Assembly: GCF_963506605.1 (NCBI RefSeq)
Contig: NC_083283.1
Span: forward strand, 83,514,001 to 83,578,000
Direction of reading: 5' to 3'
From: Zootoca vivipara
Taxonomy: Eukaryota
DNA length: 64,000 nucleotides
Shown here: positions 9,737 to 57,654 of the stretch, piece after piece
How positions within the stretch are numbered: the stretch's first letter is position 1
Layout of the letters: every line of letters starts with the position of its first letter
Made by a program: the position numbers and the translations under genes
Notes under the pieces: generated by a model
Databases searched by the model: none
Told to the model about the DNA's origin: nothing
Seen by the model: only the letters and a program-made list of their open reading frames with translations

Positions 9737-9738
<2 letters not shown>

Positions 9739-11284: not shown

Positions 11285-11761
11285 GCCTGGTTTGCACAGA
11301 ACACTAGGCTATGGTTTATTAATTTATGGTTCATTAAACTGCAGCTGACTGTTATGTGTGAACCCAACTCAATAGTTTAACTATGGTTCATTAACCAAAA
11401 TTTGTAGCTGGTTTATAAATCTTAGTATTAACCACAGTGTAAGTGCTACAGGCCAGCCTGGACCTCCCCCAAAAGCTACAGAGCTGCAGGTGACGCGTGG
11501 CAAAAACTTCAAACTGTTCTCTAGGCTCGGCTGCTCTTGCTTGTGCTTTTAACTGTTCTGTGATATAATAATCATCTGACCATCTTGATTTAGTTTAGTG
11601 CAGGCTTCCTCAAACTCGGCCCTCCAGATGTTTTGAGACTACATTTCCCATCATCCCTGACCACTGGTCCTGCTAGCTAGGGGTCATGGGAATTGTAGGC
11701 CAAAAACATCTGGAGGGCCAAGTTTGAGGAATCCTGGTTTAGTGTTATGTGCAAACTAGGC
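11285..11761. mobile_element. Palindromic MITE (PIF/Harbinger-like) containing a nested hAT MITE
   Basis: Terminal inverted repeats gcctggtttgcacagaacacta / tagtgttatgtgcaaactaggc. Confidence 0.65.
11601..11736. mobile_element. hAT MITE (136 bp)
   Basis: TIRs CAGGCTTCCTCAAACT...AGTTTGAGGAATCCTG and a perfect 8-bp TSD gtttagtg (11593..11600, 11737..11744). Confidence 0.9.
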
Positions 11762-12498
11762 CAATGAAAGAGAAGTTGCTAACACAAATACAACTACAGG
11801 AAACGGTAGAATTGAGCATTTAGACAGGAAAGTGCACACACAGTGTAACTATGACTAGAAAATAAAGTGTAGATCCACTGAGAAATGGAAGTCCCATGTG
11901 CAAGCTTCACTGAAATAAATGGGAGAAATATTCTCTTACAAAGCTCCCATTCCTTTCAATGTCCCAGTGGACTATGTCCAGGCTTTTCCCCCCTTACTGA
12001 TTATACTCATTCATGTGTTTCTCTAGGTCTTCAAATGAAGCTACTGGATACTAGTAACAGCTGCATTACAACCAGCAAACAGAATTGAAAATATTTGAAG
12101 GAAAGCAGCAAAGCTAGCATAAAAATAAACTAAGGAATAATCACAACAATGAGCATGCAACAAAGTCACCTACATTTCTTTAACAAGCTAGATCAAAAGA
12201 GCAGTGGGCTATTGTAAAATCCTACAAAGCATAAATATAATTGTCTACTAGGTCAATGTATGTGGACAATCCAGCTACACATTCTCCTACATAAGCTCCA
12301 TCGAAATGAATGAGAACAGCACAAGAGCATTTCTGTTGCTTTCTATTTTGCTTGCACAAGAGTTTCCTGGTATCTTTCTCTTTTAGGCAGAGGACCCATT
12401 TTTTTTTCAGGCCAGGGGTCAAGTTTCTTCCATGAGACTTGATCATTTGGTTATTTGTCTTCAGAGAAAGAATGATGGATGGAGTTGGTCGTCCTCAT

Positions 12499-12618
12499 CT
12501 ATTGATAGGTAAGCCAGTCATTTTGACCACAGTTCATATTTGCCCCAGTTGCCTGATTAACAGTGCAACCCGGGGCTCCAGATCTGGGAGCAGAGTCTTC
12601 AGAGAGAGATGCTCTAGC
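12499..12618 (-). CDS. Putative shared constant (terminal) exon of the Pcdh-beta subcluster, coding ARASLSEDSAPRSGAPGCTVNQATGANMNCGQNDWLTYQ*
   Basis: Acceptor GCATTTTTTATGTCCTTTGCAG|GCTAGA; phase 0 matches all nine upstream beta donors; 39 codons plus TAG; lies 2.6 kb past the last beta exon and before the first gamma promoter. Inferred, no transcript evidence. Confidence 0.7.
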   Translation of the reverse strand, partial: ARASLSEDSAPRSGAPGCTVNQATGANMNCGQNDWLTYQ

Positions 12619-13299
12619 CTGCAAAGGACATAAAAAATGCATTGTAATTTTCTGAAAGCTGGTGTGGTTTTCATTAGATAAATGCTGCCAATGCATTAAG
12701 CTGCAGTAAGAAGAGTGTAATGAAATGCCATGCTTACCAGACAGGAACATAGCAAACATTTTCTGAAAACCCAAAATATGAACTGTGTGATACAACAAAG
12801 TTGTAGTGCCATGGATGGTAGTACTATGAGTTTGGTGACAATCCAGTTTCTTTTCAGCTTGAACGAACTCAAGACAATGCCTGAGATCATAACAGGGAAC
12901 TCATTATACCAAAAACAATTATACATTTTGTCCAGCAGCAGCTTTGTAGCATTTATGTTTGCTAATAACCTCCATTTCCAAGCCTTCTTTCCTTCATTAG
13001 AGCCACACAAATAGTTGTTAGCTTGTTTTACACAATCTGTACCCTACTTTTCTACGAGGCAGCTCACAGCATTTTCAATAAAACAAGAATAAAATCCAAA
13101 ATCAGGAGAGCAGCCCAGCTCAAAATAAATACACCAGCTAAGAGCCTTTTGCCACAATTACTTACCAACAATCACTACAAAAAATCATCTACAGCTAAGC
13201 CAAGGTTTGGCTTAGATGGTGGAGGGAAATGGAGCATAGCAGTTGATCTAGATGTGCAGGCAAATATGCATGAGAGGACACAACCCTTAAGGCATGCAA

Positions 13300-15190: not shown

Positions 15191-17614
15191 CTGAACCACA
15201 TGTTGACTTTCACCTGCATGTCTGGGGACTTCCTCAGATACATTGGAACTCCTTGGATTCTGCTGAGTGTTAGGAGGCTCCACAGAGAAAACAGGAAATA
15301 GGGGCCTGAGAAACCGGAACTCGCTGTTCAGAGACCCACCAGCTAAGCACACCTCGTAATTGTAAGCCTGGGATAGAGATCCAGCACCAGGATTCGCAGG
15401 GTTCTCCTGGGAATCTGGTCCCACAGGGAAATCGGCTGCAGAGTTGTAGGTTGCTATGAACTTTTCACGTTTCTGCAACTTGATTACAACAAATGCCACT
15501 ACAGAAATGAGAAAAATACTTGAGATGGCAGCCAAGCAGATGATCAAATACATAGTCAGGTTGGGGTCTTCCTCCTCCGCTGTTTCCTCCTTTGGGAGAG
15601 CCACACTTTTCAGATAAGGGTCAGAGAAGCCGTCCACTAGAAGGATTCTGAGCGTGGCAGAGGTGGACTGGGGAGGGTGGCCGTTGTCTTGGACAACCAC
15701 AATCAGATTCTGCTTGAAGCTGTCTCGGTTATTGACTGGCCTCAGGGTGGTCACTTCTCCATTCTGGGCCCCCACCGTGAACAGACCCGGTTCTGTGGCC
15801 TTCAGCAGCTGATAGGAAAGCCAAGAGTTCTGAGCAGAATCCCTGTCCACAGCCACCACCTTGGTGACCAGGTAGCCAGTCTCTGCCCCTCGGGGAACCA
15901 GGTCATTCGAGGGGGAAGTGCCATTCTGGAGAGGGTAGAGGATGAAGGGGGCATTGTCGTTTTCATCCACAACCTGAACACAGATTGTAACTTCTGAGCT
16001 CAGTGGAGGGGAACCTGAATCCACAGCTCTCACTGTCACATGGAAATCTTTTACTTCCTCATAATCCAGAGACCGAATGGCATACAGGTTCCCCGTTTCA
16101 GAGTTGATGGAGATGTAAGCGGATGTGGGGCCATCATTGACCTTCCCAGGCAAAAGCGAGTAGGTCACTTTGGCATTCTGCGCTGTGTCCAGATCAACAG
16201 CATGGACCGAATTGATCAGAAGACCAGGAATATTGTTTTCTCTTAACTGCATTTCATAGAATGGCTTTTCAAACACTGGAGGGTTGTCATTGACATCTGA
16301 GATTTGAACATGAAGTATTCTTGTGGAAGTGAGTCTGGGAGAGCCTTGGTCTGTGGCTGTGATAGTAATGTTATATTCACTGACTTTTTCTCTGTCCAGT
16401 GGCTGTTGGGTCACCAGCTGGTAATAGTTGTTCTCTGTGGGTTTGAGCACAAATGGCAGGTTTACTTCAGTGGTGCAGGCAGTTCTGCCACTTTCTCCAG
16501 AGTCCACGTCTGTGACACTAAAGAGGGCCACCACTGTGTCTGGGGGAGAATCCTCAGGTAAGGGACTGGTGATGGATGCAATTGATATCTCTGGAGCATT
16601 GTCGTTCTCATCCTCAATCTCTACAATGACTTTACAGTAAGCAGAAAGGCCCCCTCCATCTGTGGCTCTGATCTTCATCTCATAATTTGTGTTTTCTTCA
16701 TAATCAATTATACCTGAGATAGTAAGTTCCCCAGTATTTTTATTTAACCTGAATGATCTCTGCACATTTTCTGGCACTTGGCTGAATGAGTAAGTGATGT
16801 CAGCATTGGAACCAATATCCTTGTCTCTGGCTTCAACTCTTGTGACTAATGTTTCCAATGGGCTGTTTTCCATCAGTTTTTCATGGTACATGGATTTATT
16901 AAATAGAGGAGCATTATCATTGATGTCCAGAACGTCTATGATGATTTGTGCTGTTCCAGTTTTGCGGGGTATTCCTCCATCAACAGCTGAAAGGATTAGG
17001 AAAACCTGTGCTTCCACCTCACGGTCTAATGGTTTCTCCAATACTAGGTCTGCATATTTAGTACCATCACTGTGACTTTGCACATCCAGCCTAAAATATT
17101 TATTAGGACTAAGTGTGTAATTCTGAACAGTATTTTCTCCTTTGTCTGAATCTTGAGCTCTCTCCAAAGGGAATACAGTATTTATGTGAGTTTGCTCAGG
17201 TATTTCAAAAATAAATTGATCTTTAGAGAATTTGGGGGAATTATCATTCACATCCTCTATTTGAACTTCAATTCTATATAGCTTCAATGGATCTTCTAGA
17301 ACAATTTCAGAGAGCAGAACACAATGGTCATTCTGACCACAGAGAGCCTCTCGATCTATTTTTTCCTTTAATATCATGTTGCCAGAATGAGGATCCAGCT
17401 GGAAATACTGATTGGTGCTCTTAGAAACCAGCCGGGCTCTCCGATCAGAAAGGTTCTTTGCATCCACTTTCAAATCTTTCAGCACATTAGCCACCAGGGA
17501 CCCTGCTTTCCTTTCCTCTGGCACTGAATATTGGATGGAATTGCATATTGCCCCATACATGCAGAGAGACAGAAAGAAAAATGTCACTTGCCTGTTCCTG
17601 TTATTCATTTCCAT
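15191..17614 (-). CDS. PCDHB: Protocadherin beta-like exon, subfamily A (A2, last beta)
   Basis: ATG of MEMNNRNRQV at 17614 (the track start at 17869 is an upstream non-ATG extension); 6 EC, TM, beta signature SLSQAYNYEVCLAGGSLNSEFRFLRP; donor CAG|GTGAGA at 15191; read-through stop at 15155. Confidence 0.93.
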
Positions 17615-22697: not shown

Positions 22698-25118
22698 CTG
22701 TTTCCCTGAATCTTCTTTCCCCACCTGGTCAGGAATATCTTGGGAAGCAGAAGGAGGGGTCTGGTTCACATTGAGGTTTGGGTCCCCCACAGAAAAAACA
22801 GGAATGAGGGGCCTGAGGAACCTGAACTCGCTGCTTAAGGACCCACCGGTTAAGCAAACATCATAGTGGTAACTCCTGGAAAGCGACCCGCTCTGAGAAT
22901 CCCCACAGTTCTCTGGGATGTCTGGTCTGGCAGGTGGGAAGTGAGGAGGGGCAGCGATAAAACTTTCCCTGGGATCCCTCCTGCAGATCTTGATGGCAGC
23001 AAAGGAAACAATGCAAACAAGGAACACAAAGGAGACTGCAGCCAGGCAGATCACCAAATACAAGGTCAAGCTCCCATCTTCTTCATGTTGGTCTTTACTA
23101 ATCTCCACAGCTTTCATATAAGGATCCGAAAAGCCACCCACGGGAAGGACATGGAGCATTGCAGTGCTGCTCTGGGGAGGGAGCCCGTTGTCCCTCACCA
23201 CTATCATGAGTCTCTGCTTGCTGGTGTCTCGCTCGCTCAGGGCTCTCCTGGTTCTCACTTCCCCATTCTGGGCTCCTATGCTGAAAAGACCAGGGTCTGT
23301 GGCCTTCAGCAGCTCATAGGAAAGCCACGAGTTCTGGCCAGAATCTCCATCCACAGCCACCACCTTGGTGACCAGGTAGCCAGACTCCACCGACTTGGGG
23401 ACCAGCTCATTGCAGGGGGATGTGCTGTTCTGAAGAGGGTAGAGGAAGAAGGGAGCGTTGTCGTTTTCATCTATGATGATGACTCGGACACTAACTTCTG
23501 AGCTGAGGGGAGGAGACCCTCCATCTGTAGCCCTCACTGTCACTTTGAAATCTTTGATCTGCTCATAATCCAGAGATCGGAGGGCATACAGATTTCCGCT
23601 TTCAGAGTTGACTGAGATGTAAGAGGCCACAAGGCCATCAGTGACCTTCCCAGGCAAAAGAGAGTAGGTGATCTTGGCATTCTTCTCAGTGTCCAGATCA
23701 GCAGCATGGACTGAGCCAATGAGCAATCCTGGAATATTGTTTTCCCGTATCTGCATTTCCCATGAAGACTTTTCAAATACTGGAGGGTTGTCATTGACAT
23801 CTGAGATCTGAACGTTAATCATTCTTGTGGAAGTGAGCCTGGGGGAGCCCTGGTCCACGGCTGTAATGGTAATATTATACTCTGAGACTTTCTCTCTGTC
23901 CAGGGAGCTTTGGACCAGAAGTTGGTAATAGTTATCCATCGTGGGTTTTAAGACAAAGGGAAGGTTTACCTCCACAGAGCACACCGTTCTGCCATTGTCT
24001 CCGGAGTCTCGGTCTGTGACAGTGAAGAGAGCCACAAGTGTCTCCAGGGGAGAATCTTCTGCCAAGGGACTAGTGATGGATATGATGGACACTTCAGGAA
24101 CATTGTCATTCACATCTTCAATCTCTACCAGGACCTTGCAGTGACCTGAAAGATCCCCTCCATCTGTTGCTCTGATGCTCATGCTGTAGGTGGTTTCTTT
24201 TTCATAATCAATTTCTCCCAAAACAGTTATTTCCCCAGTGAGATCATTTAAGTGGAATAAACGGTGTATTTTTTCAGGTACCCGATCAAATGAGTATGTT
24301 ATTCGTGCATTTGAACCAAAATCTGAATCTCTGGCTTCTACTTTGGAGACCAGGGTGTCCCTAGGGCTGTTTTCCTTTAACCTTACGTTATATTCAGAAT
24401 GAGTAAACTGGGGAAAATTATCATTGATGTCCAAAACCTTGATATTTATCTGAACTGTGCCTGTTCTCTGTGGCTCCCCTCCATCCACAGCTGTGAGAGT
24501 CAGTCCAAACTCTGCTGCTTCTTCCCTATCTAGAGGTTTCACCAAAATAAGGTCCAAATATTTGTTTCCAGTTCCATCACTTTTTACTTGGAGCCAGAAA
24601 TGCTCATTAGAACTGAGAGTGTAGTTTTGAACGTTATTTTTACCCAAATCTGTATCTTGTGCAGATTCCAAAGGGAACTGGGTGTTAATTGGGACATTCT
24701 CTGGAATATATAGCTTGAATTCCTTTTTTGAGAATTTGGGTGTATTGTCATTCACATCTTCTATCTCTATTTCTATACTGTAGATCTTTAAGGGGTTTTG
24801 GAGCACGATTTCAGAGAGCAGCAAGCAAGGATCAGTCTCACCACACAAAGCTTCCCGGTCTACTTTTTCATTTATCAGCAAATTCCCAGAGTGGGTATCA
24901 AGGTGGAAATATTGCTGTGTGCTTTTGGACACTAGCTGGGCTCTGCGAGCAGAGAGCTCCCCTGTTCCCAGTTTCAAATCCTTTAGCACATTAGCCACCA
25001 GAAATCCACTTTTCTTTTCTTCAGGCACAGAATAGCGTATTGAGATACACATCACTCTAGAAACAGAGAATAAGAGGAGGAGATACAGACCTTGCCTGTT
25101 CCTAATGCAGTCTTCCAT
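22698..25118 (-). CDS. PCDHB: Protocadherin beta-like exon, subfamily B (B3)
   Basis: Intact 6-EC/TM ORF; SLSRSYHYDVCLTGGSLSSEFRFLRP; donor CAG|GTGAGC at 22698; read-through stop at 22686. Confidence 0.93.
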
Positions 25119-25691: not shown

Positions 25692-28115
25692 CTGACATCT
25701 CAGATGTGTTTCTTCTCCATTACAAGGCACTTCTTGGGACCCATTGGAACTCCTTGGATTCAGCTGAGTGTTAGGAGGCTCCACAGAGAAAACAGGGAAT
25801 AGGGGCCTGAGAAACCGGAACTCGCTGTTCAGAGACCCACCAGCTAAGCACACCTCATAGTTATAAGCCTGAGATAGAGATCCAGCACCAGGATCCGCAG
25901 AGATGATCTGGGAATCAGGTCCCACTTGGAAATTGGCTGCAGAGTTGTAAGTTCCTATGAACTTTTCACGTTTCTGCAACTTGATTACAACAAACGCCAC
26001 TACAGAAATAAGAAAGATGCTTGAGATGGCAGCCAAGCAGATGATCAAATACATAGTCAGGCTGGGGTCTTCCTCCTCCGCTGTTTCCTCCTTTGGAAGA
26101 GCCACACTTTTCAGATAAGGGTCAGAGAAGCCGTCCACTAGAAGGATTCTGAGCGTGGCAGAGGTGGACTGGGGAGGATGTCCGTTGTCTCGGACGACCA
26201 CAACCAGATTCTGCTTGAAGCTGTCTCGGTTACTGACTGGTCTCAGAGTGGTCACTTCTCCATTCTGGGCCCCCACCGTGAACAGACCCGGTTCTGTGGC
26301 CTTCAGCAGCTGATAGGAAAGCCAAGAGTTCTGAGCAGAATCCCTGTCCACAGCCACCACCTTGGTGACCAGGTAGCCAGTCTCTGCCCCTCGGGGAACC
26401 AGGTCATTCGAGGGGGAAGTGCCATTCTGGAGAGGGTAGAGGATGAAGGGGGCATTGTCATTTTCATCCACAACCTGAACGTGGATCGTAACTTCTGAGC
26501 TCAGTGGAGGGGAACCTGAATCCACAGCCCTCACCGTCACATGGAAATCTTTTACCTCCTCATAATCCAGAGACCGAATGGCATACAGGTTCCCCGTTTC
26601 AGAGTTGATGGAGATGTAAGAGGAAGTGGGGCCATCATTGACCTTCCTAGGCAAAAGCGAGTAGGTCACTTTGGCATTCTGCGCTGTGTCCAGATCAACA
26701 GCATGGATGAAACCGATCAGAAGACCAGGAATATTGTTTTCTCTTAACTGCATTTCATAGGATGGCTTTTCAAACACTGGAGGGTTGTCATTGACATCTG
26801 AGATTTGAACATGAAGTATTCTTGTGGAAGTGAGTCTGGGAGAGCCTTGGTCTGTGGCTGTGATGGTGATATTATACTCAGAGGCTTGTTCTCTGTCCAG
26901 TGGCTGTTGGGTCACCAGCTGGTAATAGTTGTTCTCTGTGGGTTTGAGCACAAATGGCAGGTTTACTTCAGTGGTGCAGGCAGTTCTGCCACTGTCTCCA
27001 GAGTCCACGTCTGTGACACTAAAGAGGGCCACCACTGTGTCTGCGGGAGAGTCCTCAGGTAAGGGACTGGTGATGGAAGTGATTGATATCTCTGGAGCAT
27101 TGTCGTTCTCATCCTCAATCTCTACAATAACTTTACAGTAAGCAGAAAGTCCCCCTCCATCTGTGGCTCTGATGTTTATCTCATAATTTGTGTTTTCTTC
27201 ATAATCAATCGTTGCTGAAGTTGTAAGTTCCCCGGTGTGTTTATTTAACTTGAACATTCTCAACACATTTTCTGGCACTTGGCTGAATGAATAAGTGATA
27301 TGGGCGTAGGAACCAATATCCCTGTCAGTGGCTTCAACTTTGGTGACCAGTGTACCTGGTAGAAGGTTTTCCAGCAGTTGCACATTATATACAGATTTAT
27401 TAAAGTGAGGGGCATTGTCATTGGTGTCCAGAACTTGAACAATAATGTTTGTACTTCCGCTTCTTCTTGGGATCCCTCCATCAACAGCTGTCAGCATTAA
27501 TGTAATCTGTGGCTTCTCTTCACGGTCCAAAGGCTTTTCTAACACCAGTTCTGCATATTTGCTACCATCAGTATGACTTTGCACATCCAGCCTAAAATGT
27601 TCATTTGGACTAAGAGTATAGTTCTGAACAGTATTTTCTCCTTTGTCTGAATCTTCAGCTTTTTCCAAAAGGAATCGGGTGTTCATGGGCGTCTGCTCAG
27701 GTATTTCCAAAACAAATTGTTTTTCAGAGAATATGGGGGAATTATCATTCACGTCCTCTATCTGAATTTCAATTCTGTGTAGCTGCCTTGGCTTTTCCAG
27801 TACCATTTCACAAAGCAGAACACAAGGGTCATTCTGACCACACAGGGACTCTCGGTCTATTTTTTCTTTTATTATCACATCCCCAGATTGGGGATCCAGC
27901 TCAAAATACTGCCTGGCAGTCTTAGAAAGCAGCTGCGCTCTCCGAGCAGACAACTCCTTTACTTCCATTTTCAAATCTTTCAGCACATTAGCCACCAGAG
28001 ACCCACTTTTCTTTTCCTCAGGCACTGAATAGCGGAAGGACTCACACACCACACCACAGGTACAGAGACAGATAAAGACGAGACAAACTTGCCTGCTATG
28101 ATGGAGGGTTTTCAT
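25692..28115 (-). CDS. PCDHB: Protocadherin beta-like exon, subfamily A (A4)
   Basis: ATG of MKTLHHSRQV at 28115 (track start 28139 is TTG); donor CAG|GTGAGG at 25692; read-through stop at 25668. Confidence 0.93.
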
Positions 28116-32549: not shown

Positions 32550-34970
32550 CTGTTTCATTGGCTTTCTGCTCTCCAATGCATCAGGAGTATCTTGGGAAGC
32601 AGAAGGAGGGGTCTGGTTCACATTGAGGTTTGGGTCTCCCACAGAAAAAACAGGAATGAGGGGCCTGAGGAACCTGAACTCGCTGCTTAAGGACCCACCG
32701 GTTAAGCAAACATCGTAGTGGTAACTCCTGGAAAGCGACCCGCTCTGAGAATCCCCACAGTTCTCTGGGATGTCGGGTCTGGCAGGTGGGAAGTGAGGAG
32801 GGGCAGCGATCAAACTTTCCCTGGGATCCCTCCTGCAGATCTTGATGGCAGCAAAGGAAACAATGCAAACGAGGAACACAAAGGAGACTGCAGCCAGGCA
32901 GATCACCAAATACAAGGTCAAGCTCCCATCTTCTTCATGTTGGTCTTTACTAATCTCCACAGCCTTCATATAAGGATCTGAAAAGCCACCCACGGGAAGG
33001 ACATGGAGCATTGCAGTGCTGCTCTGGGGAGGGAGCCCGTTGTCCCTCACCACTATCATGAGTCTCTGCCTGCTGGTGTCTCGCTCGGTCAGGGCTCTCC
33101 TGGTTCTCACTTCCCCATTCTGGGCTCCTATGCTGAAAAGACCAGGGTCTGTGGCCTTCAGCAGCTCATAGGAAAGCCACGAGTTCTGGCCAGAATCTCC
33201 ATCCACAGCCACCACCTTGGTGACCAGGTAGCCAGACTCCACCGACTTGGGGACCAGCTCATTGCAGGGGGATGTGCTGTTCTGAAGAGGGTAGAGGAAG
33301 AAGGGAGCGTTGTCGTTTTCATCTATGATGATGACTCGGACAGTAACTTCTGAGCTGAGGGGAGGAGACCCTCCATCTGTAGCCCTCACTGTCACTTTGA
33401 AATCTTTGATCTGCTCATAATCCAGAGATCGGAGGGCATACAGATTTCCACTTTCAGAGTTGACTGAGATGTAAGAGGCCACAAGGCCATCAGTGACCTT
33501 CCCGGGCAAAAGGGAGTAGGTGATCTTGGCATTCTTCTCAGTGTCCAGATCAGCAGCATGGACTGAGCCAATGAGCAATCCTGGAATATTGTTTTCCCGT
33601 ATCTGCATTTCCCATGAAGACTTTTCAAATACTGGAGGGTTGTCATTGACATCTGAGATCTGAACATTAATCATTCTTGTTGAAGTGAGCCTGGGGGAGC
33701 CCTGGTCAACACCTGTGATGGTGACATTATACTCTGAGACCTTCTCTCTGTCCAAGGGACTTTGGACCACAAGCTGGTAATAGTTATTCATAGTGGGCTT
33801 TAACATAAAGGGAAGGTTTGTCTCCACAGAGCACACAGTTCTACCATTGTCTCCAGAATCTCGGTCTGTGACGGTGAAGAGGGCAACAAGTGTCTCCAGG
33901 GGAGAATCTTCTGCCAAAGGACTAGTGATGGATATGATGGACACTTCAGGGACATTGTCATTCACATCTTCAATCTCTACCAGGACCTTGCAATGCCCCC
34001 AAAGACCCCCTCCATCTGTTGCTCTGATGTTCATGCTGTAGCTGGTTTCTTTTTCATAATCAAGCTGACCAGAAAGAGTCATTTCCCCATTGATTTCATT
34101 TAGGGAAAACAATTTGTATATTTTTTCAGACACCCGGTGGAATGAGTAGGTGATCTGTGCGTTTGAACCAAAATCCAAATCTGTGGCTTCTACTTTGAAG
34201 ACCAGAGTGCCCTGAGGGCTGTTTTCCTTTAACCTTACTTTATATTCAGGTTGAGTAAACTGAGGAGAATTGTCATTGATATCCAAAACATTAATATTTA
34301 TTTGAACTGTGCCTGTTCTCTGAGGCACACCTCCATCCACAGCAATGAGAGTCAATCCAAAGTGTGAGTTATTCTCTCTGTCTAGTGGCTTCTGCAGAAC
34401 AAGATGCACATATTTCTGTCCATCCTCATTGCTTTCCACATATAGTCGGAAATGCTCATTGGGACTGAGCATGTATTTTTGGATACTGTTTTCTCCTAAG
34501 TCCTCATCTTGGGCAGATTCCAAGAGAAATTGTGTGTTTGTCAGAACATTCTCTGGAATTTCCAGATCAAGTTTATCTTTAGAGAATTTGGGAGTATTGT
34601 CATTCACATCTTCTATCTTCAATTCTATACTGTAGATATTTAAGGGGTTTTGAAGCACTATTTCAGACAGCAGCATGCAAGGATCAGTCTGGCCACATAA
34701 AGCTTCTCTGTCTATTTTATCATTTAACAGCAAATTCCCAGAGTGAGTATCAAGGTTGAAATATTGCTTTGTGCTTTTGGACACTAGCTGGGCTCTGCGA
34801 GCAGAGAGCTCCCCTATTCCAAGTTTCAAATCCTCCAACACATTAGCCACCAAAAACCCATTTTTCTTTTCTTCAGGTACAGAATAGTGAAATGAAATGC
34901 AGACTGTTTTCAACACAAAGAGAAAAAGCAAGAGATACAGACCTTTCATCTTTCTGAAGATATCGTTCAT
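32550..34970 (-). CDS. PCDHB: Protocadherin beta-like exon, subfamily B (B5)
   Basis: ATG of MNDIFRKMKG at 34970 (track start 34979 is GTG); donor CAG|GTGAGT at 32550; read-through stop at 32541. Confidence 0.93.
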
Positions 34971-35606: not shown

Positions 35607-38030
35607 CTGGAACATATCCTGATTTTCCTCTGGATGACTTGGGACTCCTTCAGAATCATTGGCACTCCTTGGATTCACCTGAGTGTTAGGAGGCTCCACA
35701 GAGAAAACAGGAAATAGGGGCCTGAGAAACCGGAACTCGCTGTTCAGAGACCCACCAGCTAAGCACACTTCATAGTTGTAAGCCTGGGACAGAGATCCAG
35801 CACCAGGATCTGCAGAGTTCTCCTGGGAATCTGGTCCCACTGGGAAATTGGCTGCAGAGTTGTAGGTTCCTATGAACTTCTCACGTTTCTGCATCTTGAT
35901 TACAATAAATGCCACTACAGAAATGAGAAAGATGCTTGAGATGGCAGCCAAGCAGATGATCAAATACATAGTCAGGCTGGGGTCTTCCTCCTCCGCTGTT
36001 TCCTCCTTTGGGAGAGCCACACTTTTCAGATAAGGGTCAGAGAAGCCGTCCACTAGAAGGATTCTGAGCGTGGCAGAGGTGGACTGGGGAGGGTGGCCGT
36101 TGTCTTGGACAACCACAATCAGATTCTGCTTGAAGCTGTCTCGGTTACTGACTGGCCTCAGGGTGGTCACTTCTCCATTCTGGGCCCCCACCGTGAACAG
36201 ACCCGGTTCTGTGGCCTTCAGCAGCTGATAGGAAAGCCAAGAGTTCTGAGCAGAATCCCTGTCCACAGCCACCACCTTGGTGACCAGGTAGCCAGTCTCT
36301 GCCCCTCGGGGAACCAGGTCATTCGAGGGGGAAGTGCCATTCTGGAGAGGGTAGAGGATGAAGGGGGCATTGTCATTTTCATCCACAACCTGAACGTGGA
36401 TTGTAACTTCTGAGCTCAGTGGAGGGGAACCTGAATCCACAGCCCTCACCGCCACATGGAAATCTTTTACCTCCTCATAATCCAGAGACCGAATGGCATA
36501 CAGGTTCCCCGTTTCAGAGTTGATGGAGATGTAAGAGGAAGTGGGGCCATCATTGACCTTCCCAGGCAAAAGCGAGTAGGTCACTTTGGCATTCTGCGCT
36601 GTGTCCAGATCAACAGCATGGACAAAACCAATCAGAAGACCAGGAATATTGTTTTCTCTTAACTGCATTTCATAGGATGGCTTTTCAAACACTGGAGGGT
36701 TGTCATTGACATCTGAGATTTGAACATGAACTATTCTTGTGGAAGTGAGTCTGGGAGAGCCTCTGTCAGTGGCTGTGATAGTAATGTTATATTCACTGAC
36801 CTTTTCTCTGTCCAGTGGCTGTTGGGTCACCAGCTGGTAATAGTTGTTCTCTGTGGGTTTGAGCACAAATGGCAGGTTTACTTCAGTGGTGCAGGCAGTT
36901 CTGCCACTGTCTCCAGAGTCCACGTCTGTGACACTAAAGAGGGCCACCACTGTGTCTGGAGGAGAATCCTCAGGTAACGAACTGGTGATGGAAGTGATTG
37001 ATATCTCTGGAGCATTGTCATTCTCATCTTCAATGTCCACAATTACTTTGCAGTAAGCCGAAAGCCCCCCTCCATCTGTGGCTTTGATGTGCATCTCATA
37101 ACTGGTGATTTCTTCATAGTCAGTCATCCCTACAATTGTAAGTTCCCCAGTTTGTTTGTTTAACTTGAATGACCTCAACACATTTTCTGGAACTTCACTG
37201 AATGAATAAGTGAGGCGAGCATTGGTACCAAAATCCCTGTCAGTGGCTTCAACTTTTGCGACCAGTGTATCCAATGGGCTGTTTTCCATTAGTTTCACTT
37301 TGTACTCAGATTGTGGAAACTGAGGTACATTATCATTAGCGTCCAGAATATCGATGAGAAGCTGTGCTGTTCCAATTCTTTTTGGCATCCCACCATCAAT
37401 AGCTGACAGCGTAAGATACATTCGTGGGTTCACCTCACGGTCCAGCGGTTTCTCTAACACCAGTTCTGCGTATTTGCTACCATCACTTTGACTTTTCACA
37501 TTCAGCCTAAAATGTTCATTAGGACTAAGGGTGTAGTTCTGAACAGCATTTTCTCCTTTATCTGGATCTTCTGCTCTTTCCAAAGGAAATCTGATATCCA
37601 CAGGAGTCTGCTCAGGTATTTCAAGAAGGAATTGATTTTTAGAGAATTTGGGAGAATTATCATTCACATCCTCTATCTGAATTTCAATTCTGTGTAGCTG
37701 CAATGGCTTTTCCAGCACAATTTCAGACAGTAGAATACATGGTTCATTCTGACCACAAAGGGACTCTCGATCTATTTTATCCTTTACTGTCACATCCCCT
37801 GAATGAGGATCCAGCTGGAAATACTGTTTGGAGCCCTTAGAAACCAGCCGGGCTCTCCGAGCAGACAGCTCCTTTGCATCCACTCTTAAATCTTTTAGCA
37901 CATTTGCTACCAGAGACCCACTTTTCTCCTCCTCTGCCACTGAATAGCGGAAAGACTCACACATTGCTATGCATGCACAGAGATACAAGGAAAAAGACCA
38001 AACTTGCCTGATCTTGAGCTGCATTTCCAT
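35607..38030 (-). CDS. PCDHB: Protocadherin beta-like exon, subfamily A (A6)
   Basis: Intact ORF MEMQLKIRQV...; donor CAG|GTGAGA at 35607; the read-through stop (35532) lies inside the BovB tail. Confidence 0.93.
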
Positions 38031-42505: not shown

Positions 42506-44926
42506 CTTTTTTCCTGATTCTTCCATCCCCACCTGGTCAGAAATATCTTGGGAAGCAGAAGGAGGGGTCTGGTTCACATTGAGGTTTGGGTCTCCCACAG
42601 AAAAAACAGGAATGAGGGGCCTGAGGAACCTGAACTCGCTGCTTAAGGACCCACCGGTTAAGCAAACATCGTAGTGGTAACTCCTGGAAAGCGACCCACT
42701 CTGAGAATCCCCACAGTTCTCTGGGATGTCGGGTCTGGCAGGTGGGAAGTGAGGAGGGGCAGCAATAAAACTTTCCCTGGGATCCCTCCTGCAGATCTTG
42801 AGAGCAGCAAAGGAAACAATGCAAACAAGGAACACGAAGGAGACTGCAGCCAGGCAGATCACCAAATACAAGGTCAAGCTCCCATCTTCTTCATGTTGGT
42901 CTTTACTAATCTCCACAGCCTTCATATAAGGATCCGAAAAGCCACCCACGGGAAGGACATGGAGCATTGCAGTGCTGCTCTGGGGAGGGAGCCCGTTGTC
43001 CCTGACCACTATCATGAGTCTCTGCTTGCTGGTGTCTCGCTCGGTCAGGGCTCTCCTGGTTCTCACTTCCCCATTCTGGGCTCCTATGCTGAAAAGACCA
43101 GGGTCTGTGGCCTTCAGCAGCTCATAGGAAAGCCACGAGTTCTGGCCAGAATCTCCGTCCACAGCCACCACCTTGGTGACCAGGTAGCCAGACTCCACCG
43201 ACTTGGGGACCAGCTCGTTGCAGGGGGATGTGCTGTTCTGGAGCGGGTAGAGGAAGAAGGGAGCGTTGTCGTTTTCGTCTATGATTACGACTCGGACAGT
43301 AACTTCTGAGCTGAGGGGAGGAGACCCTCCATCTGTAGCCCTCACTGTCACTTTGAAATCTTTGATCTGCTCATAATCCAGAGATCGGAGGGCATACAGA
43401 TTTCCACTTTCAGAGTTGACTGAGATGTAAGAGGCCACAAGGCCATCAGTGACCTTCCCGGGCAAAAGGGAGTAGGTGATCTTGGCATTCTTCTCAGTGT
43501 CCAGATCAGCAGCATGGACTGAGCCAATGAGCAATCCTGGAATATTGTTTTCCCGTATCTGCATTTCCCATGAAGACTTTTCAAATACTGGAGGGTTGTC
43601 ATTGACATCTGAGATTTGAACGTTAATAATTCTTGTGGAAGTGAGCCTGGGGGAGCCCTGGTCCACGGCTGTAATGGTGATATTATACTCTGAGGCCTTC
43701 TCTCTGTCCAAGGGACTTTGGACCACAAGCTGGTAGTAGTTATTCATAGTGGGTTTTAATATAAAGGGAAGGTTTACTTCCACAGAGCACATGGTTCTGC
43801 CATTGTCTCCGGAGTCCCCGTCTGTGACGGTGAAGAGGGCAACAAGGGTCTCCAGGGGAGAATCTTCTGCCAAAGGACTAGTGATGGATATGATGGACAC
43901 TTCAGGGACATTGTCATTCACATCCTCAATCTCTACCAGGACCTTGCAATGCCCCAAAAGACCCCCTGCATCTGTTGCTCTGATGTTCATGCTGTAGCTG
44001 GTTTCTTTTTCATAATCAAGCTGACCAGAAAGGGTGATTTCCCCCGTGACTTCATTTAGGTGGAACAGATCGTAAATTTCTGCAGGCACTCTGTAGAATG
44101 AGTAGACAATTTGTGCATTTGAACCAAAATCCAAATCTGTAGCTTCCACTTTGGAAATCAGGGTGTCTCGAGGACTGTTTTCCTTTAACCTTATTTTATA
44201 TTCAGTCTGTGTAAACTGTGGGGAATTATCATTATTGTCAAGAACATCAATATTTATTTTAACTGTGCCTGTTCTCTGTGGCTCCCCTCCATCCACAGCA
44301 GTGAGAGTCAGTTCAAAGTGTGGCTCCTTCTCCCTGTCCAGTGGCTTCTTCAGAACAAGATCGACATACTTGTTTCCATCCTCATCACTTTTAACATCAA
44401 GCCGGAAATGTTCATTGGGACTGAGTGTGTAGTTTTGGATGTTATTTCTCCCCAGGTCCGCATCTTGGGCAGATTCCAAGGGGAAATGTGTATTTGGTGA
44501 GAAATTTTCAGGAATTTCCAGATCAAATACCTTTTTAGAGAATTTGGGGACATTATCATTTACGTCTTCTATCTTGATTTCAATACTGAAGATCTTCAAG
44601 GGATTTTGCAACACAATTTCAGACTGTAATAAGCAAGGATCACTCTGGCCACATAATGTTTCTCGGTCTGTTTTATCATCTATCAATAAATTCCCCGAGT
44701 GGGTATCAAGGTGAAAATATTGCTTACTGTTCTTAGAAACAAGCTGGGCTCTGCGAACAGAGAGCTCCCCTTTTCCCAGTTTCAAATCCTCCAGCACATT
44801 AGCCACCAAAGACCCCCTTTTCTTTTCTTCGGGCACAGAATAGTGAAGTGAAATACTTAGTGCTCCAGGAAGACAAAGGAAAAGCAAAAAATACAGACCT
44901 TGTTCCTTTCTGTAGCCGTCTCCCAT
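42506..44926 (-). CDS. PCDHB: Protocadherin beta-like exon, subfamily B (B7)
   Basis: Intact ORF MGDGYRKEQG...; donor AAG|GTGAGG at 42506; read-through stop at 42470. Confidence 0.93.
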
Positions 44927-46961: not shown

Positions 46962-49385
46962 CTGAACCACATGTTGACTTTCACCTGCATGACTTGGGAT
47001 TCCTTCAGAATCATTGGAACCCCTTGGATTCACCTGAGTGTTAGGAGGCTCCACAGAGAAGACAGGAAATAGGGGCCTGAGAAACCGGAACTCGCTGTTC
47101 AGAGACCCACCAGCTAAGCACACCTCATAGTTGTAAGCCTGGGACAGAGATCCAGCACCAGGATCTGCAGAGTTCTCCTGGGAATCTGGTCCCACTGGGA
47201 AATTGGCTGCAGAGTTGTAGGTTCCTATGAACTTTTCACGTTTCTGCAACTTGATTACAACAAACGCCACTACAGAAATGAGAAAAATACTTGAGATGGC
47301 AGCCAAGCAGATGATCAAATACATAGTCAGGCTGGGGTCTTCCTCCTCCGCTGTTTCCTCCTTTGGGAGAGCCACACTTTTCAGATAAGGGTCAGAGAAG
47401 CCGTCCACTAGAAGGATTCTGAGCGTGGCAGAGGTGGACTGGGGAGGATGTCCATTGTCTCGGACGACCACAACCAGATTCTGCTTGAAGCTGTCTCGGT
47501 TACTGACTGGCCTCAGGGTGGTCACTTCTCCATTCTGGGCCCCCACCGTGAACAGACCCGGTTCTGTGGCCTTCAGCAGCTGATAGGAAAGCCAAGAGTT
47601 CTGAGCAGAATCCCTGTCCACAGCCACCACCTTGGTGACCAGGTAGCCAGTCTCTGCCCCTCGGGGAACCAGGTCATTCGAGGGGGAAGTGCCATTCTGG
47701 AGAGGGTAGAGGATGAAGGGGGCATTGTCATTTTCATCCACGACCTGAACACAAACCGTAACTTCTGAGCTCAGTGGAGGGGAACCTGAATCCACAGCCC
47801 TCACCGTCACATGGAAATCTCTTACCTCCTCATAATCCAGAGACCGAATGGCATACAGGTTCCCCGTTTCAGAGTTGATGGAGATGTAAGAGGATGTGGG
47901 GCCATCATTGACCTTCCCAGGCAAAAGCGAGTAGGTCACTTTGGCATTCTGCGCTGTGTCCAGATCAACAGCATGGATGAAACCGATCAGAAGACCAGGA
48001 ATATTGTTTTCTCTTAACTGCATTTCATAGAATGGCTTTTCAAACACTGGAGGGTTGTCATTGACATCTGAGATTTGAACATGAAGTATTCTTGTGGAAG
48101 TGAGTCTGGGGGAGCCTCTGTCCGTGGCTGTGATAGTAATGTTATATTCACTGACTTTTTCTCTGTCCAGTGGCTGTTGGGTCACCAGCTGGTAATAGTT
48201 GTTCTCTGTGGGTTTGAGCACAAATGGCAGGTTTACTTCAGTGGTGCAGGCAGTTCTGCCACTTTCTCCAGAGTCCACGTCTGTGACACTAAAGAGGGCC
48301 ACCACTGTGTCTGGGGGAGAATCCTCAGGTAACGAACTGGTGATGGAAGTGATTGATATCTCTGGAGCATTGTCATTCTCATCTTCAATGTCCACAATTA
48401 CTTTGCAGTAAGCTGAAAGCCCCCCTCCATCTGTGGCTTTGATGTGCATCTCATAACTGGTGATTTCTTCATAGTCAGTCATCCCTACAATTGTAAGTTC
48501 CCCAGTTTTTTTGTTTAACTTGAATGACCTCAACACATTTTCTGGAACTTCACTGAATGAATAAGTGAGGCGAGCATTGGTACCAAAATCCCTGTCAGTG
48601 GCTTCAACTTTTGCGACCAGTGTATCCAATGGGCTGTTTTCCATTAGTTTCACTTTGTACTCAGATTGTGGAAACTGAGGTACATTATCATTAGCATCCA
48701 GAATATCGATGAGAAGCTGTGCTGTTCCAGTTCTTTTGGGGATCCCCCCATCGATAGCTGACAGCGTAAGATACATGTGTGGATTCACCTCACGGTCCAG
48801 CGATTTCTCTAACACCAGTTCTGCGTATTTGCTACCATCACTTTGACTTTTCAAATTCAGCCTAAAATGTTCATTTGGACTAAGGGTGTAGTTCTGAACA
48901 GCATTTTCTCCTTTGTCTGAGTCTTGAGCTTTCTCCAAAGGAAATCGGGTATTTGTTGGGATTTGCTCTGATATTTCAAGAAGGAATTGGTTTTTAGAGA
49001 ATTTTGGGGAATTATCATTCACATCCTCTATCTGAATTTCAATTCTGTGTAGCTGCAATGGCTTTTCCAGCACAATTTCAGACAGTAGAATACATGGTTC
49101 ATTCTGACCACACAGGGACTCTCGATCTATTTTATCCTTTACTGTCACATCCCCTGAACGAGGATCCAGCTGGAAATACTGCTTGGAGCTCTTAGAAACC
49201 ATCCGGGCTCTCCGAGCAGACAGCTCCTTTGCATCCACTCTCAAATCTTTTAGCACATTCGCTACCAGAGACCCACTTTTCTCCTCCTCTGCCACTGAAT
49301 AGCGGAAAGACTCACACATTGCTATGCATGCACAGAGATACAGGGAAAAAGACCAAACTTGCCTGATCTTGAGCTGCATTTCCAT
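46962..49385 (-). CDS. PCDHB: Protocadherin beta-like exon, subfamily A (A8)
   Basis: ATG of MEMQLK at 49385 (an in-frame upstream ATG exists at 49418); donor CAG|GTGAGT at 46962; read-through stop at 46914. Confidence 0.93.
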
Positions 49386-55233: not shown

Positions 55234-57654
55234 CTTTTCCACTGATTCTTCTTTCCCCACCTGGTCAGGAATATCTTGGGAAGCAGAAGGAGGGGTCTGG
55301 TTCACATTGAGGTTTGGGTCCCCCACAGAAAAAACAGGAATGAGGGGCCTGAGGAACCTGAACTCGCTGCTTAAGGACCCACCGCTTAAGCAAACATCGT
55401 AGTGGTAACTCCTGGAAAGCGACCCGCTCTGAGAATCCCCACAGTTCTTTGGGATGTCGGGTCTGGCAGGTGGGAAGTGAGGAGGGGCAGCAATAAAACT
55501 TTCCCTGGGATCCCTCCTGCAGATCTTGATGGCAGCAAAGGAAACAATGCAAACGAGGAACACAAAGGAGACTGCAGCCAGGCAGATCACCAAATACAAG
55601 GTCAAGCTCCCATCTTCTTCATGTTGGTCTTTACTAATCTCCACAGCCTTCATATAAGGATCCGATAAGCCACCCACGGGAAGGACATGGAGCATTGCAG
55701 TGCTGCTCTGGGGAGGGAGCCCGTTGTCCCTGACCACTATCATGAGTCTCTGCTTGCTGGTGTCTCGCTCGCTCAGGGCTCTCCTGGTTCTCACTTCCCC
55801 ATTCTGGGCTCCTATGCTGAAAAGACCAGGGTCTGTGGCCTTCAGCAGCTCATAGGAAAGCCAGGAGTTCTGGCCAGAATCTCCGTCCACAGCCACCACC
55901 TTGGTGACCAGGTAGCCAGACTCCACTGATTTGGGGACCAGCTCATTGCAGGGGGATGTGCTGTTCTGAAGAGGGTAGAGGAAGAAGGGAGCGTTGTCGT
56001 TTTCATCTATGATTACGACTCGAATAGTAACTTCTGAGCTGAGGGGAGGAGACCCTCCATCTGTAGCCCTCACCGTCACTTTGAAATCTTTGATCTGCTC
56101 GTAATCCAGAGATCGGAGGGCATACAGATTTCCGCTTTCAGAGTTGACTGAGATGTAAGAGGCCACAAGGACATCAGTGACCTTCCCAGGCAAAAGGGAG
56201 TAGGTGATCTTGGCATTCTTCTCAGTGTCCAGATCAGCAGCACGGACTGAGCCAATGAGCAATCCTGGAATATTGTTTTCCCGTATCTGCATTTCCCATG
56301 AAGACTTTTCAAATACTGGAGGATTGTCATTGACATCTGAGATTTGAACGTTAATGATTCTTGTTGAAGTGAGCCTGGGGGAACCCTGGTCAACAGCTGT
56401 GATGGTGATATTATACTCTGAGACCTTCTCTCTGTCCAAGGGACTTTGTACCACAAGCTGGTAATAGTTATTCATAGTGGGTTTTAATATAAAGGGAAGG
56501 TTTACTTCCACAGAGCACATGGTTCTGCCATTGTCTCCGGAGTCTCGGTCTGAGACACTGAAGAGAGCCACAAGTGTCTCCAGGGTAGAATCTTCTGCCA
56601 AAGGACTAGTGATGGATATTACGGACACTTCAGGGACATTGTCATTCACATCCTCAATCTCTACCAGGACCTTGCAGTGACCTGAAAGGCCCCCTCCATC
56701 TGTTGCACTGATGCTCATGTCATAGCTGCTTTCTTTTTCATAATCAAGCTGACCAGAAAGGGTGATTTCCCCCGTGACTTCATTTAGGTGGAACAAATCA
56801 TATATTTCTTCCGGTACCCGATTGAATGAGTAGGCAATTTGTGCATTTGAACCAAAATCCAAATCTGTAGCTTCCACTTTGGAAATCAGGGTGTCCTGAG
56901 GACTGTTTTCCTTTAACCTTACTTTATATTCAGTCTGTGTAAACTGTGGGGAATTATCATTATTGTCAAGAACATCAATATTTATTTTAACTGTGCCTGT
57001 TTTCTGTGGCTCCCCTCCATCTACAGCTGTGAGAGTCAGTTCCAAGTGTGGGTCCTTCTCCCTGTCCAGTGGTTTCTTCAGGACAAGATCCACATATTTC
57101 CTTCCATTCTTGTTGCTCTCCATGCTAAGCATGAAATGCTCATTGGGACTGAGCGTGTAGTTTTGGATGTTATTTTTCCCCAGGTCCGCATCTTGGGCAG
57201 ATTCCAAGGGGAAATGTGTATTTGGAGAGACATTTTCAGGAATTTCCAGATCAAATACCTTTTTAGAGAATTTGGGGACATTATCATTTATGTCTTCTAT
57301 CTTGATTTCAATACTGAAGATCTTTAAGGGATTTTGCAACACAATTTCAGACTGTAAGAAGCAAGGATCACTCTGGCCACATAATGTTTCTCGGTCTATT
57401 TTATCATTTATCAATAAATTCCCTGAGTGGGTATCAAGGTGAAAATATTGCTTACTGTTCTTAGAAACAAGCTGGGCTCTGCGAACAGAGAGCTCCCCTT
57501 TTCCCAGTTTCAAATCCTCCAGGACATTAGCCACCAAAGACCCCCTTTCCTTTTCTTCGAGCACAGAATAGTGAAGTGAAATACTTAGTGCTCCAGGAAG
57601 ACAAAGGAAAAGCAAAAAATACAGACCTTGTTCCTTTCTGTAGCCGTCTCCCAT
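55234..57654 (-). CDS. PCDHB: Protocadherin beta-like exon, subfamily B (B9)
   Basis: Intact ORF closely related to B7; donor AAG|GTGAAT at 55234; read-through stop at 55147. Confidence 0.93.

What the first reader, a model, noticed from the sequence alone, without database searches (positions are those of the whole stretch)
12499..12640. Candidate constant exon for the Pcdh-beta subcluster: nine variable exons may splice to one shared 39-aa tail
Seen: in the 9.4-kb gap between the last beta exon and the first gamma exon, the minus strand has a strong acceptor (GCATTTTTTATGTCCTTTGCAG|G at 12618). In phase 0 it continues with 39 open codons, ARASLSEDSAPRSGAPGCTVNQATGANMNCGQNDWLTYQ, then TAG. 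The sequence is not a recognisable repeat and is more GC-rich than its flanks. Phase 0 is the phase of all nine beta donors upstream. Known: Pcdh-alpha and -gamma use variable exons spliced to shared constant exons, whereas mammalian Pcdh-beta genes are described as single-exon with no constant region. Inference: this lizard beta array has its own variable/constant architecture with one terminal constant exon, giving every beta isoform a common cytoplasmic tail unrelated in overall sequence to the alpha or gamma constant domains. It could be an ancestral feature lost in mammals or a reptile innovation. I cannot check whether automated lizard annotations already model this exon.
Basis: partly seen in the sequence, partly recalled or inferred. 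Interest (0 to 1): 0.92.

Follow-up and report, generated by a model that had tools for sequence, protein, structure and literature searches.

The report
Shared tail exon of lizard beta-protocadherins
The lizard beta-protocadherin genes, described in the literature as single-exon genes, all carry splice donors and share one short last exon that is conserved across lizards and snakes, was recycled from a dead protocadherin exon, and is already in automated gene models.

Summary
On the minus strand a pyrimidine tract plus AG (12620-12619) precedes 39 open codons (12618-12502) and TAG (12501-12499). All nine beta exons in the window end in phase-0 AG|GTGAG-type donors.

The interpretation, a shared beta constant exon, is supported.
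- The same tail ends 66 of the 138 squamate beta models I fetched, from about 20 species (geckos to snakes), at 62-97% identity.
- RefSeq for this species (Zootoca vivipara, XP_034959204.1) already joins donor 15191 to 12618.
- Stranded RNA reads cover 11437 to about 12640 in the minus sense only and stop near the acceptor. I saw no junction read myself, and a few reads and one contig run unspliced through the acceptor.

New here is the exon's origin. It is a relic of the EC5/EC6 boundary of a protocadherin variable exon. The match is colinear at protein level (E 1e-5; shuffle z 10.4) and DNA level (52% over 181 nt, one 5-nt gap), and it crosses the acceptor. The pyrimidine tract and CAG are the old F-L-Y-P-L-Q codons.

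Published accounts say lizard beta has no constant exons. So this is annotated but apparently undescribed. Whether it predates squamates could not be tested.

The parts
12499..12618 (-). Coding part of the beta constant exon: 39 codons plus TAG (12501-12499).
   Evidence: Searches give the translation. The tail is conserved at 62-97% identity in about 20 squamate species. It is present in Zootoca RefSeq models P0123 and P0124.
12619..12660 (-). 3' end of the intron: AG at 12620-12619 and the pyrimidine tract. It still carries relic codons of the EC5-EC6 linker (an E-N-D-N-A-like GAAAATTACAATGC at 12652-12639, and F-L-C-P-L-Q at 12636-12619).
   Evidence: tblastn, the DNA alignment A1, identity statistics and comparison with the intact sites in the beta exons.
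12484..12652 (-). Full extent of the recognisable variable-exon relic (EC5/EC6 boundary). It spans the acceptor, the whole coding part and a few codons past the stop.
   Evidence: The only colinear hit in the 9.4-kb gap (E 1e-5). Shuffle z 10.4, with 0 of 2000 shuffles reaching the score. phmmer against 1.84 billion proteins hits EC6 starts of clustered protocadherins, E 7e-14 to 4e-5. 52% nt identity with one 5-nt gap, z 7.2.
11315..12498 (-). Inferred 3' UTR, down to the only AATAAA (11320-11315). It contains a SINE-like repeat at about 11600-11740.
   Evidence: Stranded RNA runs X20 and X21 cover 11437-12532 only with the first mate on + (minus-sense RNA), at depth 2-7. Contigs X1 (11702-12567) and X5 (12152-12621) lie here. 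The polyA signal scan is. The cleavage site itself was not seen, because the laid stretch ended at 11300.
12673..12677 (-). Candidate branch point CTAAT, about 55 nt upstream of the AG.
   Evidence: Sequence only. Inference, not tested.
15191..17614 (-). Last beta variable exon (ATG 17614, donor after 15191). RefSeq joins it to 12618.
   Evidence: (six cadherin repeats plus Cadherin_C_2).
22698..25118 (-). Beta variable exon, type 2, donor AAACAG|GTGAGC.
   Evidence: RefSeq P0005 models it unspliced.
25692..28115 (-). Beta variable exon, type 1, donor TGTCAG|GTGAGG.
32550..34970 (-). Beta variable exon, type 2, donor AAACAG|GTGAGT.
35607..38030 (-). Beta variable exon, type 1, donor TTCCAG|GTGAGA.
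   Evidence: The Lacerta agilis orthologue P0129 is modelled as …DMFQ joined to the tail.
42506..44926 (-). Beta variable exon, type 2, donor AAAAAG|GTGAGG.
46962..49385 (-). Beta variable exon, type 1, donor GTTCAG|GTGAGT.
55234..57654 (-). Beta variable exon, type 2, donor GAAAAG|GTGAAT.
61050..63473 (-). Beta variable exon, type 1, donor GTTCAG|GTGAGT.

Best explanation
12618-12499 (minus strand) is the coding part of a real 3'-terminal 'constant' exon of the squamate Pcdh-beta subcluster.

How it works. Whichever beta variable exon is transcribed is spliced from its phase-0 donor to the acceptor at 12619/12618. The variable exon encodes EC1-6, the transmembrane segment and a short cytoplasmic stretch. 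Each one has its own upstream conserved CTCF-like element. The constant exon adds a common 39-aa C-terminal tail, the stop codon, a 3' UTR of about 1.2-1.3 kb and the polyadenylation signal. The squamate beta array is therefore built like the alpha and gamma arrays, but with one short constant exon.

Where it came from. The exon was not inherited from an alpha- or gamma-type constant region. It is an exapted fragment of a decayed protocadherin variable exon. The pyrimidine-rich codons P-F-F-L-Y-P-L-Q at the EC5-EC6 linker form a latent 3' splice site, still visible in every intact beta exon. The first ~39 codons of EC6, up to the SGQNxWLSYQ motif, became the tail, ended by a new stop.

Shown versus inferred.
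- Shown: the sequence features, conservation, homology, minus-sense transcription ending near the acceptor, and the presence of the junction in public models.
- Inferred: use by all nine exons in this species, promoter choice, the polyA site, and any cytoplasmic function of the tail. My guess for the function is a disordered sorting or interaction peptide under purifying selection.
For: 1. Nine of nine beta ORFs have consensus phase-0 donors, after which the paralogs diverge and hit random stops.
2. The acceptor, the 39 codons and the stop are as described.
3. 66 of 138 fetched squamate beta models end in this tail. They come from Gekkota, Scincoidea, Lacertoidea (including an amphisbaenian and a teiid), Anguimorpha, Iguania and a viper. 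Identity is 62-97%, the stop is at the same place, and many different variable exons per species join the one tail.
4. Zootoca RefSeq isoforms P0123 and P0124 match the window's last beta exon at 98.6-98.8% and continue directly into the tail.
5. Lacerta and Podarcis models join orthologues of both paralog types (…HVVQ, …DMFQ, …SGKQ, …VEQ) to the tail.
6. RNA: stranded runs X20 and X21 cover 11437 to about 12640 only in the minus-RNA sense, with about 0 in the intron 12670-14700. The X5 contig ends at 12621 with 5 further unmatched letters. That is what a spliced contig would do, because exon ends and the intron end share CAG.
7. Relic origin:
   - The only colinear tblastn hit in the gap crosses the acceptor.
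   - Shuffle z 10.4.
   - phmmer against the whole library hits EC6 starts.
   - The site follows the fifth DxNDNxP linker.
   - The intact beta exons read CCCCCTTCATCCTCTACCCTCTCCAG| at the homologous place.
   - The DNA alignment shows 52% identity with one 5-nt gap, z 7.2.
   - A Logan ORF from another species reads …FLYSLQ before the same tail.
Against: - No junction row appeared in my one read-laying run.
- The last beta exon's 3' end was almost unexpressed in those runs. Loose ends at 12618 were not among those listed.
- One low-depth contig (X1, 12600-12821) and about two X21 molecules run unspliced through the acceptor.
- The tissue of the RNA runs is unknown.
- RefSeq for this species joins only the last beta exon to the tail and models exon 22686-25118 as an unspliced single-exon gene (P0005).
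- Gene models are predictions, and I could not see their transcript support.
- No function is known for the tail, and it matches no Pfam family.
Confidence: 0.85

Rival explanations
1. The exon is real but belongs only to the last beta gene, or the last few, as a two-exon gene. The other beta exons in this species are single-exon genes that terminate by read-through just past the donor, as in mammals.
For: Zootoca RefSeq has the tail only on isoforms of the last exon (P0123, P0124). It models exon 22686-25118 unspliced (P0005). No junctions were listed. Read-through adds only 3-31 codons.
Against: All nine donors keep consensus sequence and phase, although the sequence just behind them has diverged. 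In Podarcis, Lacerta, Anolis, Pogona, Heteronotia, Rhineura and others, 4-12 different variable exons per species carry the same tail. These include orthologues of both paralog types present here.
Confidence: 0.08
2. Beta donors mainly splice far downstream to the gamma constant exons. The 39-codon exon is a minor alternative, or 'poison', terminal exon.
For: The first gamma exon in the window also has a phase-0 CAG|GTGAGT donor, at an equivalent distance after the Cadherin_C_2 match. That distance is 37 aa, against 38 aa for beta, so the phases are compatible. A review proposes that beta arose from gamma variable exons (PMC7811963).
Against: None of the 138 fetched beta models carries a gamma-type constant tail. 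The 39-aa frame and its stop have been kept across the whole of Squamata, which a rarely used exon would not be. The exon is the first acceptor downstream of the array.
Confidence: 0.05
3. It is a chance open frame behind a chance AG. The conservation reflects a non-coding element, or an annotation copied from species to species.
For: A 39-codon frame is not unusual in 9.4 kb. Gene models can be propagated by homology.
Against: The frame, length and stop are kept in genomes about as divergent as squamates get, with substitutions but almost no indels. Independent pipelines (RefSeq and Ensembl/UniProt entries) both have it. There is strand-specific RNA cover with an edge near the acceptor. All upstream exons have phase-matched donors.
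Confidence: 0.02

Closest known systems
Pcdh-alpha and Pcdh-gamma variable/constant exon organisation (Wu & Maniatis 1999; as summarised in PMC2764143, PMC4978886)
   Same: A tandem array of ~2.4-kb variable exons, each encoding EC1-6, the transmembrane segment and a short cytoplasmic part. Each ends in a 5' splice site and is joined to shared downstream exon(s) that supply a common C-terminus, stop and 3' UTR.
   Different: There is one constant exon of 39 codons instead of three exons encoding about 125-150 aa. It has no sequence relation to the alpha or gamma constant domains (no Pfam hit). It derives from an extracellular-domain coding fragment, not from a cytoplasmic domain.
Mammalian Pcdh-beta genes, and the published description of anole beta (PMC2764143)
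   Same: The variable exons are beta-type. Best database relatives are named protocadherin beta. The array sits between alpha and gamma, and the domain content is the same.
   Different: Mammalian beta genes are described as single-exon, with their own stop and no constant exon. The anole paper assumed the same for the lizard. Here every beta exon has a donor and a shared terminal exon exists.
Exonisation of pseudogene or relic fragments through latent splice sites (general phenomenon; my own knowledge, not tested against a specific catalogue)
   Same: A decayed coding fragment supplies a ready-made pyrimidine tract plus CAG and an open frame, which are then recruited as an exon.
   Different: The recruited piece here comes from a paralogue within the same array. 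It has become the obligatory-looking last exon of a whole gene subcluster, and it has been kept for as long as squamates have existed.

Membership tests
Clustered-protocadherin variable/constant exon architecture (alpha/gamma type) | A tandem array of long variable exons, each encoding six cadherin repeats, a transmembrane segment and a short cytoplasmic part. | tested here: met
   Nine ORFs of 810-904 codons on the minus strand. Pfam finds Cadherin x6, Cadherin_2 and Cadherin_C_2. Linkers and a TM-like segment are located.
Clustered-protocadherin variable/constant exon architecture (alpha/gamma type) | Every variable exon ends in a 5' splice donor, all in one phase. | tested here: met
   Nine of nine have AG|GTGAG or AG|GTGAA, all phase 0.
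Clustered-protocadherin variable/constant exon architecture (alpha/gamma type) | Shared downstream exon(s) with an acceptor in the matching phase, providing the stop and 3' UTR. | tested here: met
   Acceptor at 12619/12618, phase 0, 39 codons, TAG. The UTR is covered by minus-sense RNA. AATAAA lies at 11320-11315.
Clustered-protocadherin variable/constant exon architecture (alpha/gamma type) | Spliced transcripts observed from several variable exons to the constant exon. | tested here: inconclusive
   No joint was listed, and some reads are unspliced at the acceptor. The X5 contig end fits a splice. Public models in about 20 species show many variable exons joined to the tail, but their transcript support could not be inspected.
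Clustered-protocadherin variable/constant exon architecture (alpha/gamma type) | Each variable exon has its own promoter with a conserved element. | tested here: inconclusive
   A conserved block, CCACAAGGTGG(C/T)…ATTG, lies about 230-250 nt upstream of each beta ATG. Its likeness to a CTCF site or CSE is from memory. The CGCT box is absent from the beta upstream regions and present upstream of the gamma exon.
Alpha- or gamma-type constant domain (homology) | Sequence similarity of the shared tail to the alpha or gamma constant region. | tested here: not met
   The tail has no Pfam family at E<=10. The only significant similarities are to EC6 starts of variable exons.
Pcdh-beta subfamily (variable exons) | Closest relatives are beta-type protocadherins, and the array lies upstream of the gamma array. 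| tested here: met
   The top 120 hits are named protocadherin beta, including the anole beta genes of Jiang et al. (D0IQ30-40). The downstream exon 3256-5769 differs in type (ILYPSPP linker). No tree was built here.
Pcdh-beta subfamily as defined in the literature | Single-exon genes lacking constant exons. | tested here: not met
   set against the statements in PMC2764143, PMC4978886 and PMC7811963.

The most novel reading that the evidence does not exclude
The beta constant exon and the beta donors are not a squamate oddity. They are the ancestral state of the beta subcluster in amniotes, or even in sarcopterygians. On this reading, beta variable exons never 'lost the ability to splice'. 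They switched from gamma constant exons to a new terminal exon born from a dead variable exon, and mammals later became single-exon by donor decay and read-through. The conserved tail, an extracellular-domain fragment now in the cytoplasm, would carry a beta-specific trafficking or signalling function.
Probability: 0.25. Interest if true: 0.75.

Novelty: new variant of a known kind. Interest (0 to 1): 0.6.

Why it matters
Reviews and the primary anole paper define the beta subcluster by its lack of constant exons (PMC2764143, PMC4978886).

A 2020 review leaves open how beta arose from gamma (PMC7811963). One scenario is that duplicated variable exons lost splicing. The other is that a duplicated cluster lost its constant exons.

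Squamates show a third state. Beta exons keep gamma-like phase-0 donors and use a new one-exon constant region made from a variable-exon relic. Three things follow:
- It gives a concrete, datable intermediate for that open question.
- It shows that a constant exon can be born inside the cluster.
- All beta isoforms of lizards and snakes would share a cytoplasmic tail that mammalian beta proteins lack. This matters for using reptiles in comparative work on neuronal self-recognition.

The value is tempered because RefSeq and Ensembl already carry the exon. The gap is in description and interpretation, not in raw discovery.

Tried and rejected
- Pfam on the 39-aa tail at E<=10: no family.
- The search for homologous proteins with the tail alone: 39 aa was under the size limit. 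I resent it as the contiguous 40-codon genomic stretch 12621-12502. No candidate of 22-70 aa shared words, so no short spliced transcript fragments were found this way. The blank says little.
- Region search with the last 42 aa of a Podarcis model: only squamates were returned. The word filter and length filter mean this is not evidence of absence in turtles, birds, crocodilians or tuatara.
- phmmer of the tail against 1.84 billion representatives: no non-squamate protein ending in the tail. The hits were only EC6 starts and one unnamed Logan ORF.
- Read laying: no joint 15191>12618 was listed. The last beta exon end was nearly silent in the four runs. 93 loose-end rows were not shown. The one call was used, so the junction could not be re-examined.
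- A weak second tblastn hit upstream of the exon (12968-12819, E 3.3) was judged to be chance.
- blastn of the exon region against the beta exons gave only short seeds. The global alignment was needed to see the DNA homology.
- Literature searches found no description of a beta constant exon in any reptile.
- I did not build, translate or search any joined variable-plus-constant model. All junction statements come from public protein models returned by the tools.

Full report
**What is there**

On the minus strand the sequence reads …GCATTTTTTATGTCCTTTGCAG|GCT…. The AG sits at 12620-12619 and the first exon base is 12618. There are 39 sense codons to 12502, then TAG at 12501-12499.

The window is a stretch of the protocadherin cluster of Zootoca vivipara. 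One ORF is identical to a RefSeq Zootoca protein (P0005).

Ten long ORFs lie on the minus strand. Nine are beta-type: six cadherin repeats, Cadherin_2 and Cadherin_C_2, with best relatives named protocadherin beta, including the anole beta genes of Jiang et al.. The tenth (3256-5769) is of another type.

The interval between the last beta ORF and that exon is 5770-15154, 9.4 kb. GC of the candidate exon is 0.49, against 0.37 in both flanks.

**Donors**

Each of the nine beta ORFs has an in-frame CAG/AAG|GTGAG (once GTGAA) 3-31 codons before its stop. Behind these sites the paralogs diverge into unrelated sequence.

The last exon bases are 15191, 22698, 25692, 32550, 35607, 42506, 46962, 55234 and 61050. 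All are phase 0, matching the acceptor.

The donors lie 38 aa after the end of the Cadherin_C_2 match. The donor of the neighbouring non-beta exon lies 37 aa after it. This is consistent with one inherited donor position.

**Is the exon real?**

I fetched 138 squamate beta-type proteins. Of these, 66 end in this tail, with the stop at the same place.

- They come from about 20 species: lacertids, an amphisbaenian, a teiid, an anguid, a cordylid, a skink, iguanians, five geckos and a viper.
- Identity to the window's tail is 62-97%. The only indels are one 3-residue gap and one 1-residue insertion.
- Within a species, many different variable exons carry the same tail. Examples are at least 8 in Anolis carolinensis, at least 7 in Heteronotia and at least 6 in Podarcis muralis.
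- Both RefSeq and UniProt/Ensembl entries have it.

For this very species, RefSeq isoforms P0123 (XP_034959204.1) and P0124 match the window's last beta exon at 98.6-98.8%. They run straight from …HVVQ into the tail.

Lacerta and Podarcis models join orthologues of both paralog types of this window to the tail.

**My own read evidence**

Two stranded RNA runs of the same species label (X20, X21) cover 11437 to about 12640. First mates are only on the + strand, which in most stranded libraries means the RNA is minus-sense. Depth is 2-7. The intron 12670-14700 has essentially nothing.

Two contig sets guessed to be RNA (X1, X5) cover 11702-12567 and 12152-12621.

The X5 contig stops matching at 12621 and carries 5 more letters. 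Variable exons end in CAG, as does the intron, so this is what a spliced contig would look like.

Against this:
- No joint was listed.
- One low-depth X1 contig (12600-12821) and about two X21 molecules read through the acceptor unspliced.
- The 3' end of the last beta exon was almost silent in these runs.
- Many loose-end rows were not displayed.

So transcription, strand and an edge near the acceptor are shown. The splice itself rests on public models and on the sequence logic.

One read variant (12595, Asp to Glu) is the residue seen in the RefSeq protein.

The only AATAAA downstream is at 11320-11315. That gives a terminal exon of about 1.3 kb. The cleavage site lay outside the stretch I laid.

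**Origin**

I searched the ten ORFs against the 9.4-kb gap. This gave one colinear hit, at 12636-12484. It runs in the exon's own frame and crosses the acceptor. F-L-C-P-L-Q plus the 39 codons aligns, without gaps, to F-L-Y-P-L-Q plus the first residues of EC6, up to the …DSGQNSWLSY… motif (E about 1e-5).

- The score is 10.4 SD above 2000 shuffles, and none of them reached it.
- The site follows the fifth DxNDNxP linker, so it is the EC5/EC6 boundary.
- phmmer of the 39 residues against 1.84 billion proteins returned EC6 starts of clustered protocadherins from other vertebrates, for example a lungfish model, at E 7e-14 to 4e-5. It also returned a 74-aa unnamed Logan ORF in which …F-L-Y-S-L-Q precedes the same tail. 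One weak unrelated hit was the only other result.
- At DNA level the relic aligns to the beta exons over 181 nt at 50-52.5% identity, with a single 5-nt gap inside the pyrimidine tract (z 7.2). The alignment includes GAAAATTACAATGC opposite the E-N-D-N-A codons.
- In the intact beta exons the homologous place reads CCCCCTTCATCCTCTACCCTCTCCAG|AAT. This is a ready-made pyrimidine tract and CAG in phase 0.

The simplest reading is that a variable exon downstream of the beta array decayed. Its latent acceptor then captured the beta donors, and a stop arose after the Y-Q of the old EC6 motif.

**Comparison with what is known**

The anole cluster paper states that beta lacks constant exons. It confirmed splicing by RT-PCR only for delta, alpha and gamma (PMC2764143).

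The Xenopus paper and a 2020 review repeat that beta genes are single-exon. The review leaves open whether beta exons lost splicing to gamma or a duplicated cluster lost its constant exons (PMC4978886; PMC7811963).

Four full-text searches found no description of a beta constant exon in reptiles.

The architecture works like alpha and gamma. The tail is not a member of their constant-domain families.

**Limits**

I therefore had no DNA from other species: no acceptor conservation, no dN/dS, no outgroups.
- The protein searches returned only squamates with the tail. The filters make that no evidence of absence elsewhere.
- I built and searched no joined exon model.
This agrees with what I see in the nine exons here.

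**Verdict**

This is a real, ancient (at least crown-squamate) shared terminal exon of the beta subcluster. It is already in automated annotation but at odds with the published description, and its origin from a variable-exon relic appears to be new.

Noticed in passing
window 23430-23455, 26427-26452 and the homologous places in all nine beta exons: Every intact beta exon carries, at the EC5-EC6 linker, a strong latent 3' splice site in phase 0 (…CCCTTCATCCTCTACCCTCTCCAG|AAT). Gene models from a rattlesnake (P0007) and a skink (P0102) join a beta donor to exactly this internal site of another variable exon. These may be cryptic splicing or prediction artefacts.
   Followed up: partly
window 49942-51315 (+): A 457-aa ORF on the opposite strand, between two beta exons, is a reverse transcriptase (RVT_1, E 5e-41). 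It is presumably a LINE-type retroelement remnant.
   Followed up: partly
window ~11600-11740: A SINE-like repeat lies inside the inferred 3' UTR. It attracts very high read and contig depth on both strands and many loose ends, so expression there cannot be read as belonging to this gene.
   Followed up: no
window 15155-63473: The nine beta exons alternate between two paralog types. Type 1 ends …VVQ, …RCQ or …MFQ. Type 2 ends …GKQ, …MKQ, …GKK or …VEK. This suggests tandem duplication of a two-exon unit of about 10-13 kb.
   Followed up: no
about 230-250 nt upstream of each beta ATG (e.g. near 25350, 28350, 38270): A conserved block, (A/C)CACA(A/C)GGTGG(C/T)…ATTG, is shared by all nine beta upstream regions. 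It resembles a CTCF-type site (from memory). The CGCT box known from mammalian Pcdh promoters is absent here but present upstream of the exon at 5769.
   Followed up: partly
window 22686-25118: RefSeq models this beta exon as a single-exon gene that reads three codons past the donor (P0005, ends …GKQVSN). The sister lacertid orthologues are modelled as spliced to the tail. The annotation within the species is therefore inconsistent.
   Followed up: partly
window 12543, 12560, 12563, 12595, 12616, 12631: Read and contig differences from the window lie inside the exon and its pyrimidine tract. They include Asp>Glu at codon 8 (as in RefSeq), Ala>Pro at codon 26 (the residue seen in Lacerta agilis) and an extra A in the tract. 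The window is only 98.6-98.8% identical to the RefSeq proteins. This suggests divergent lineages or haplotypes of the species.
   Followed up: no
window 14797-15026: Reads and contigs show opposite-strand joints and a 228-nt skip just downstream of the last beta exon, at high depth on both strands. It looks like an inverted-repeat transposon and not part of the gene.
   Followed up: no
window 22770, 32622, 42578 (AAT|GTGAAC) and 35679, 47034 (CAG|GTGAAT): Second in-frame GT sites lie 24 codons upstream of the main donors, inside conserved coding sequence. They are probably not used, but they are phase-0 compatible.
   Followed up: no
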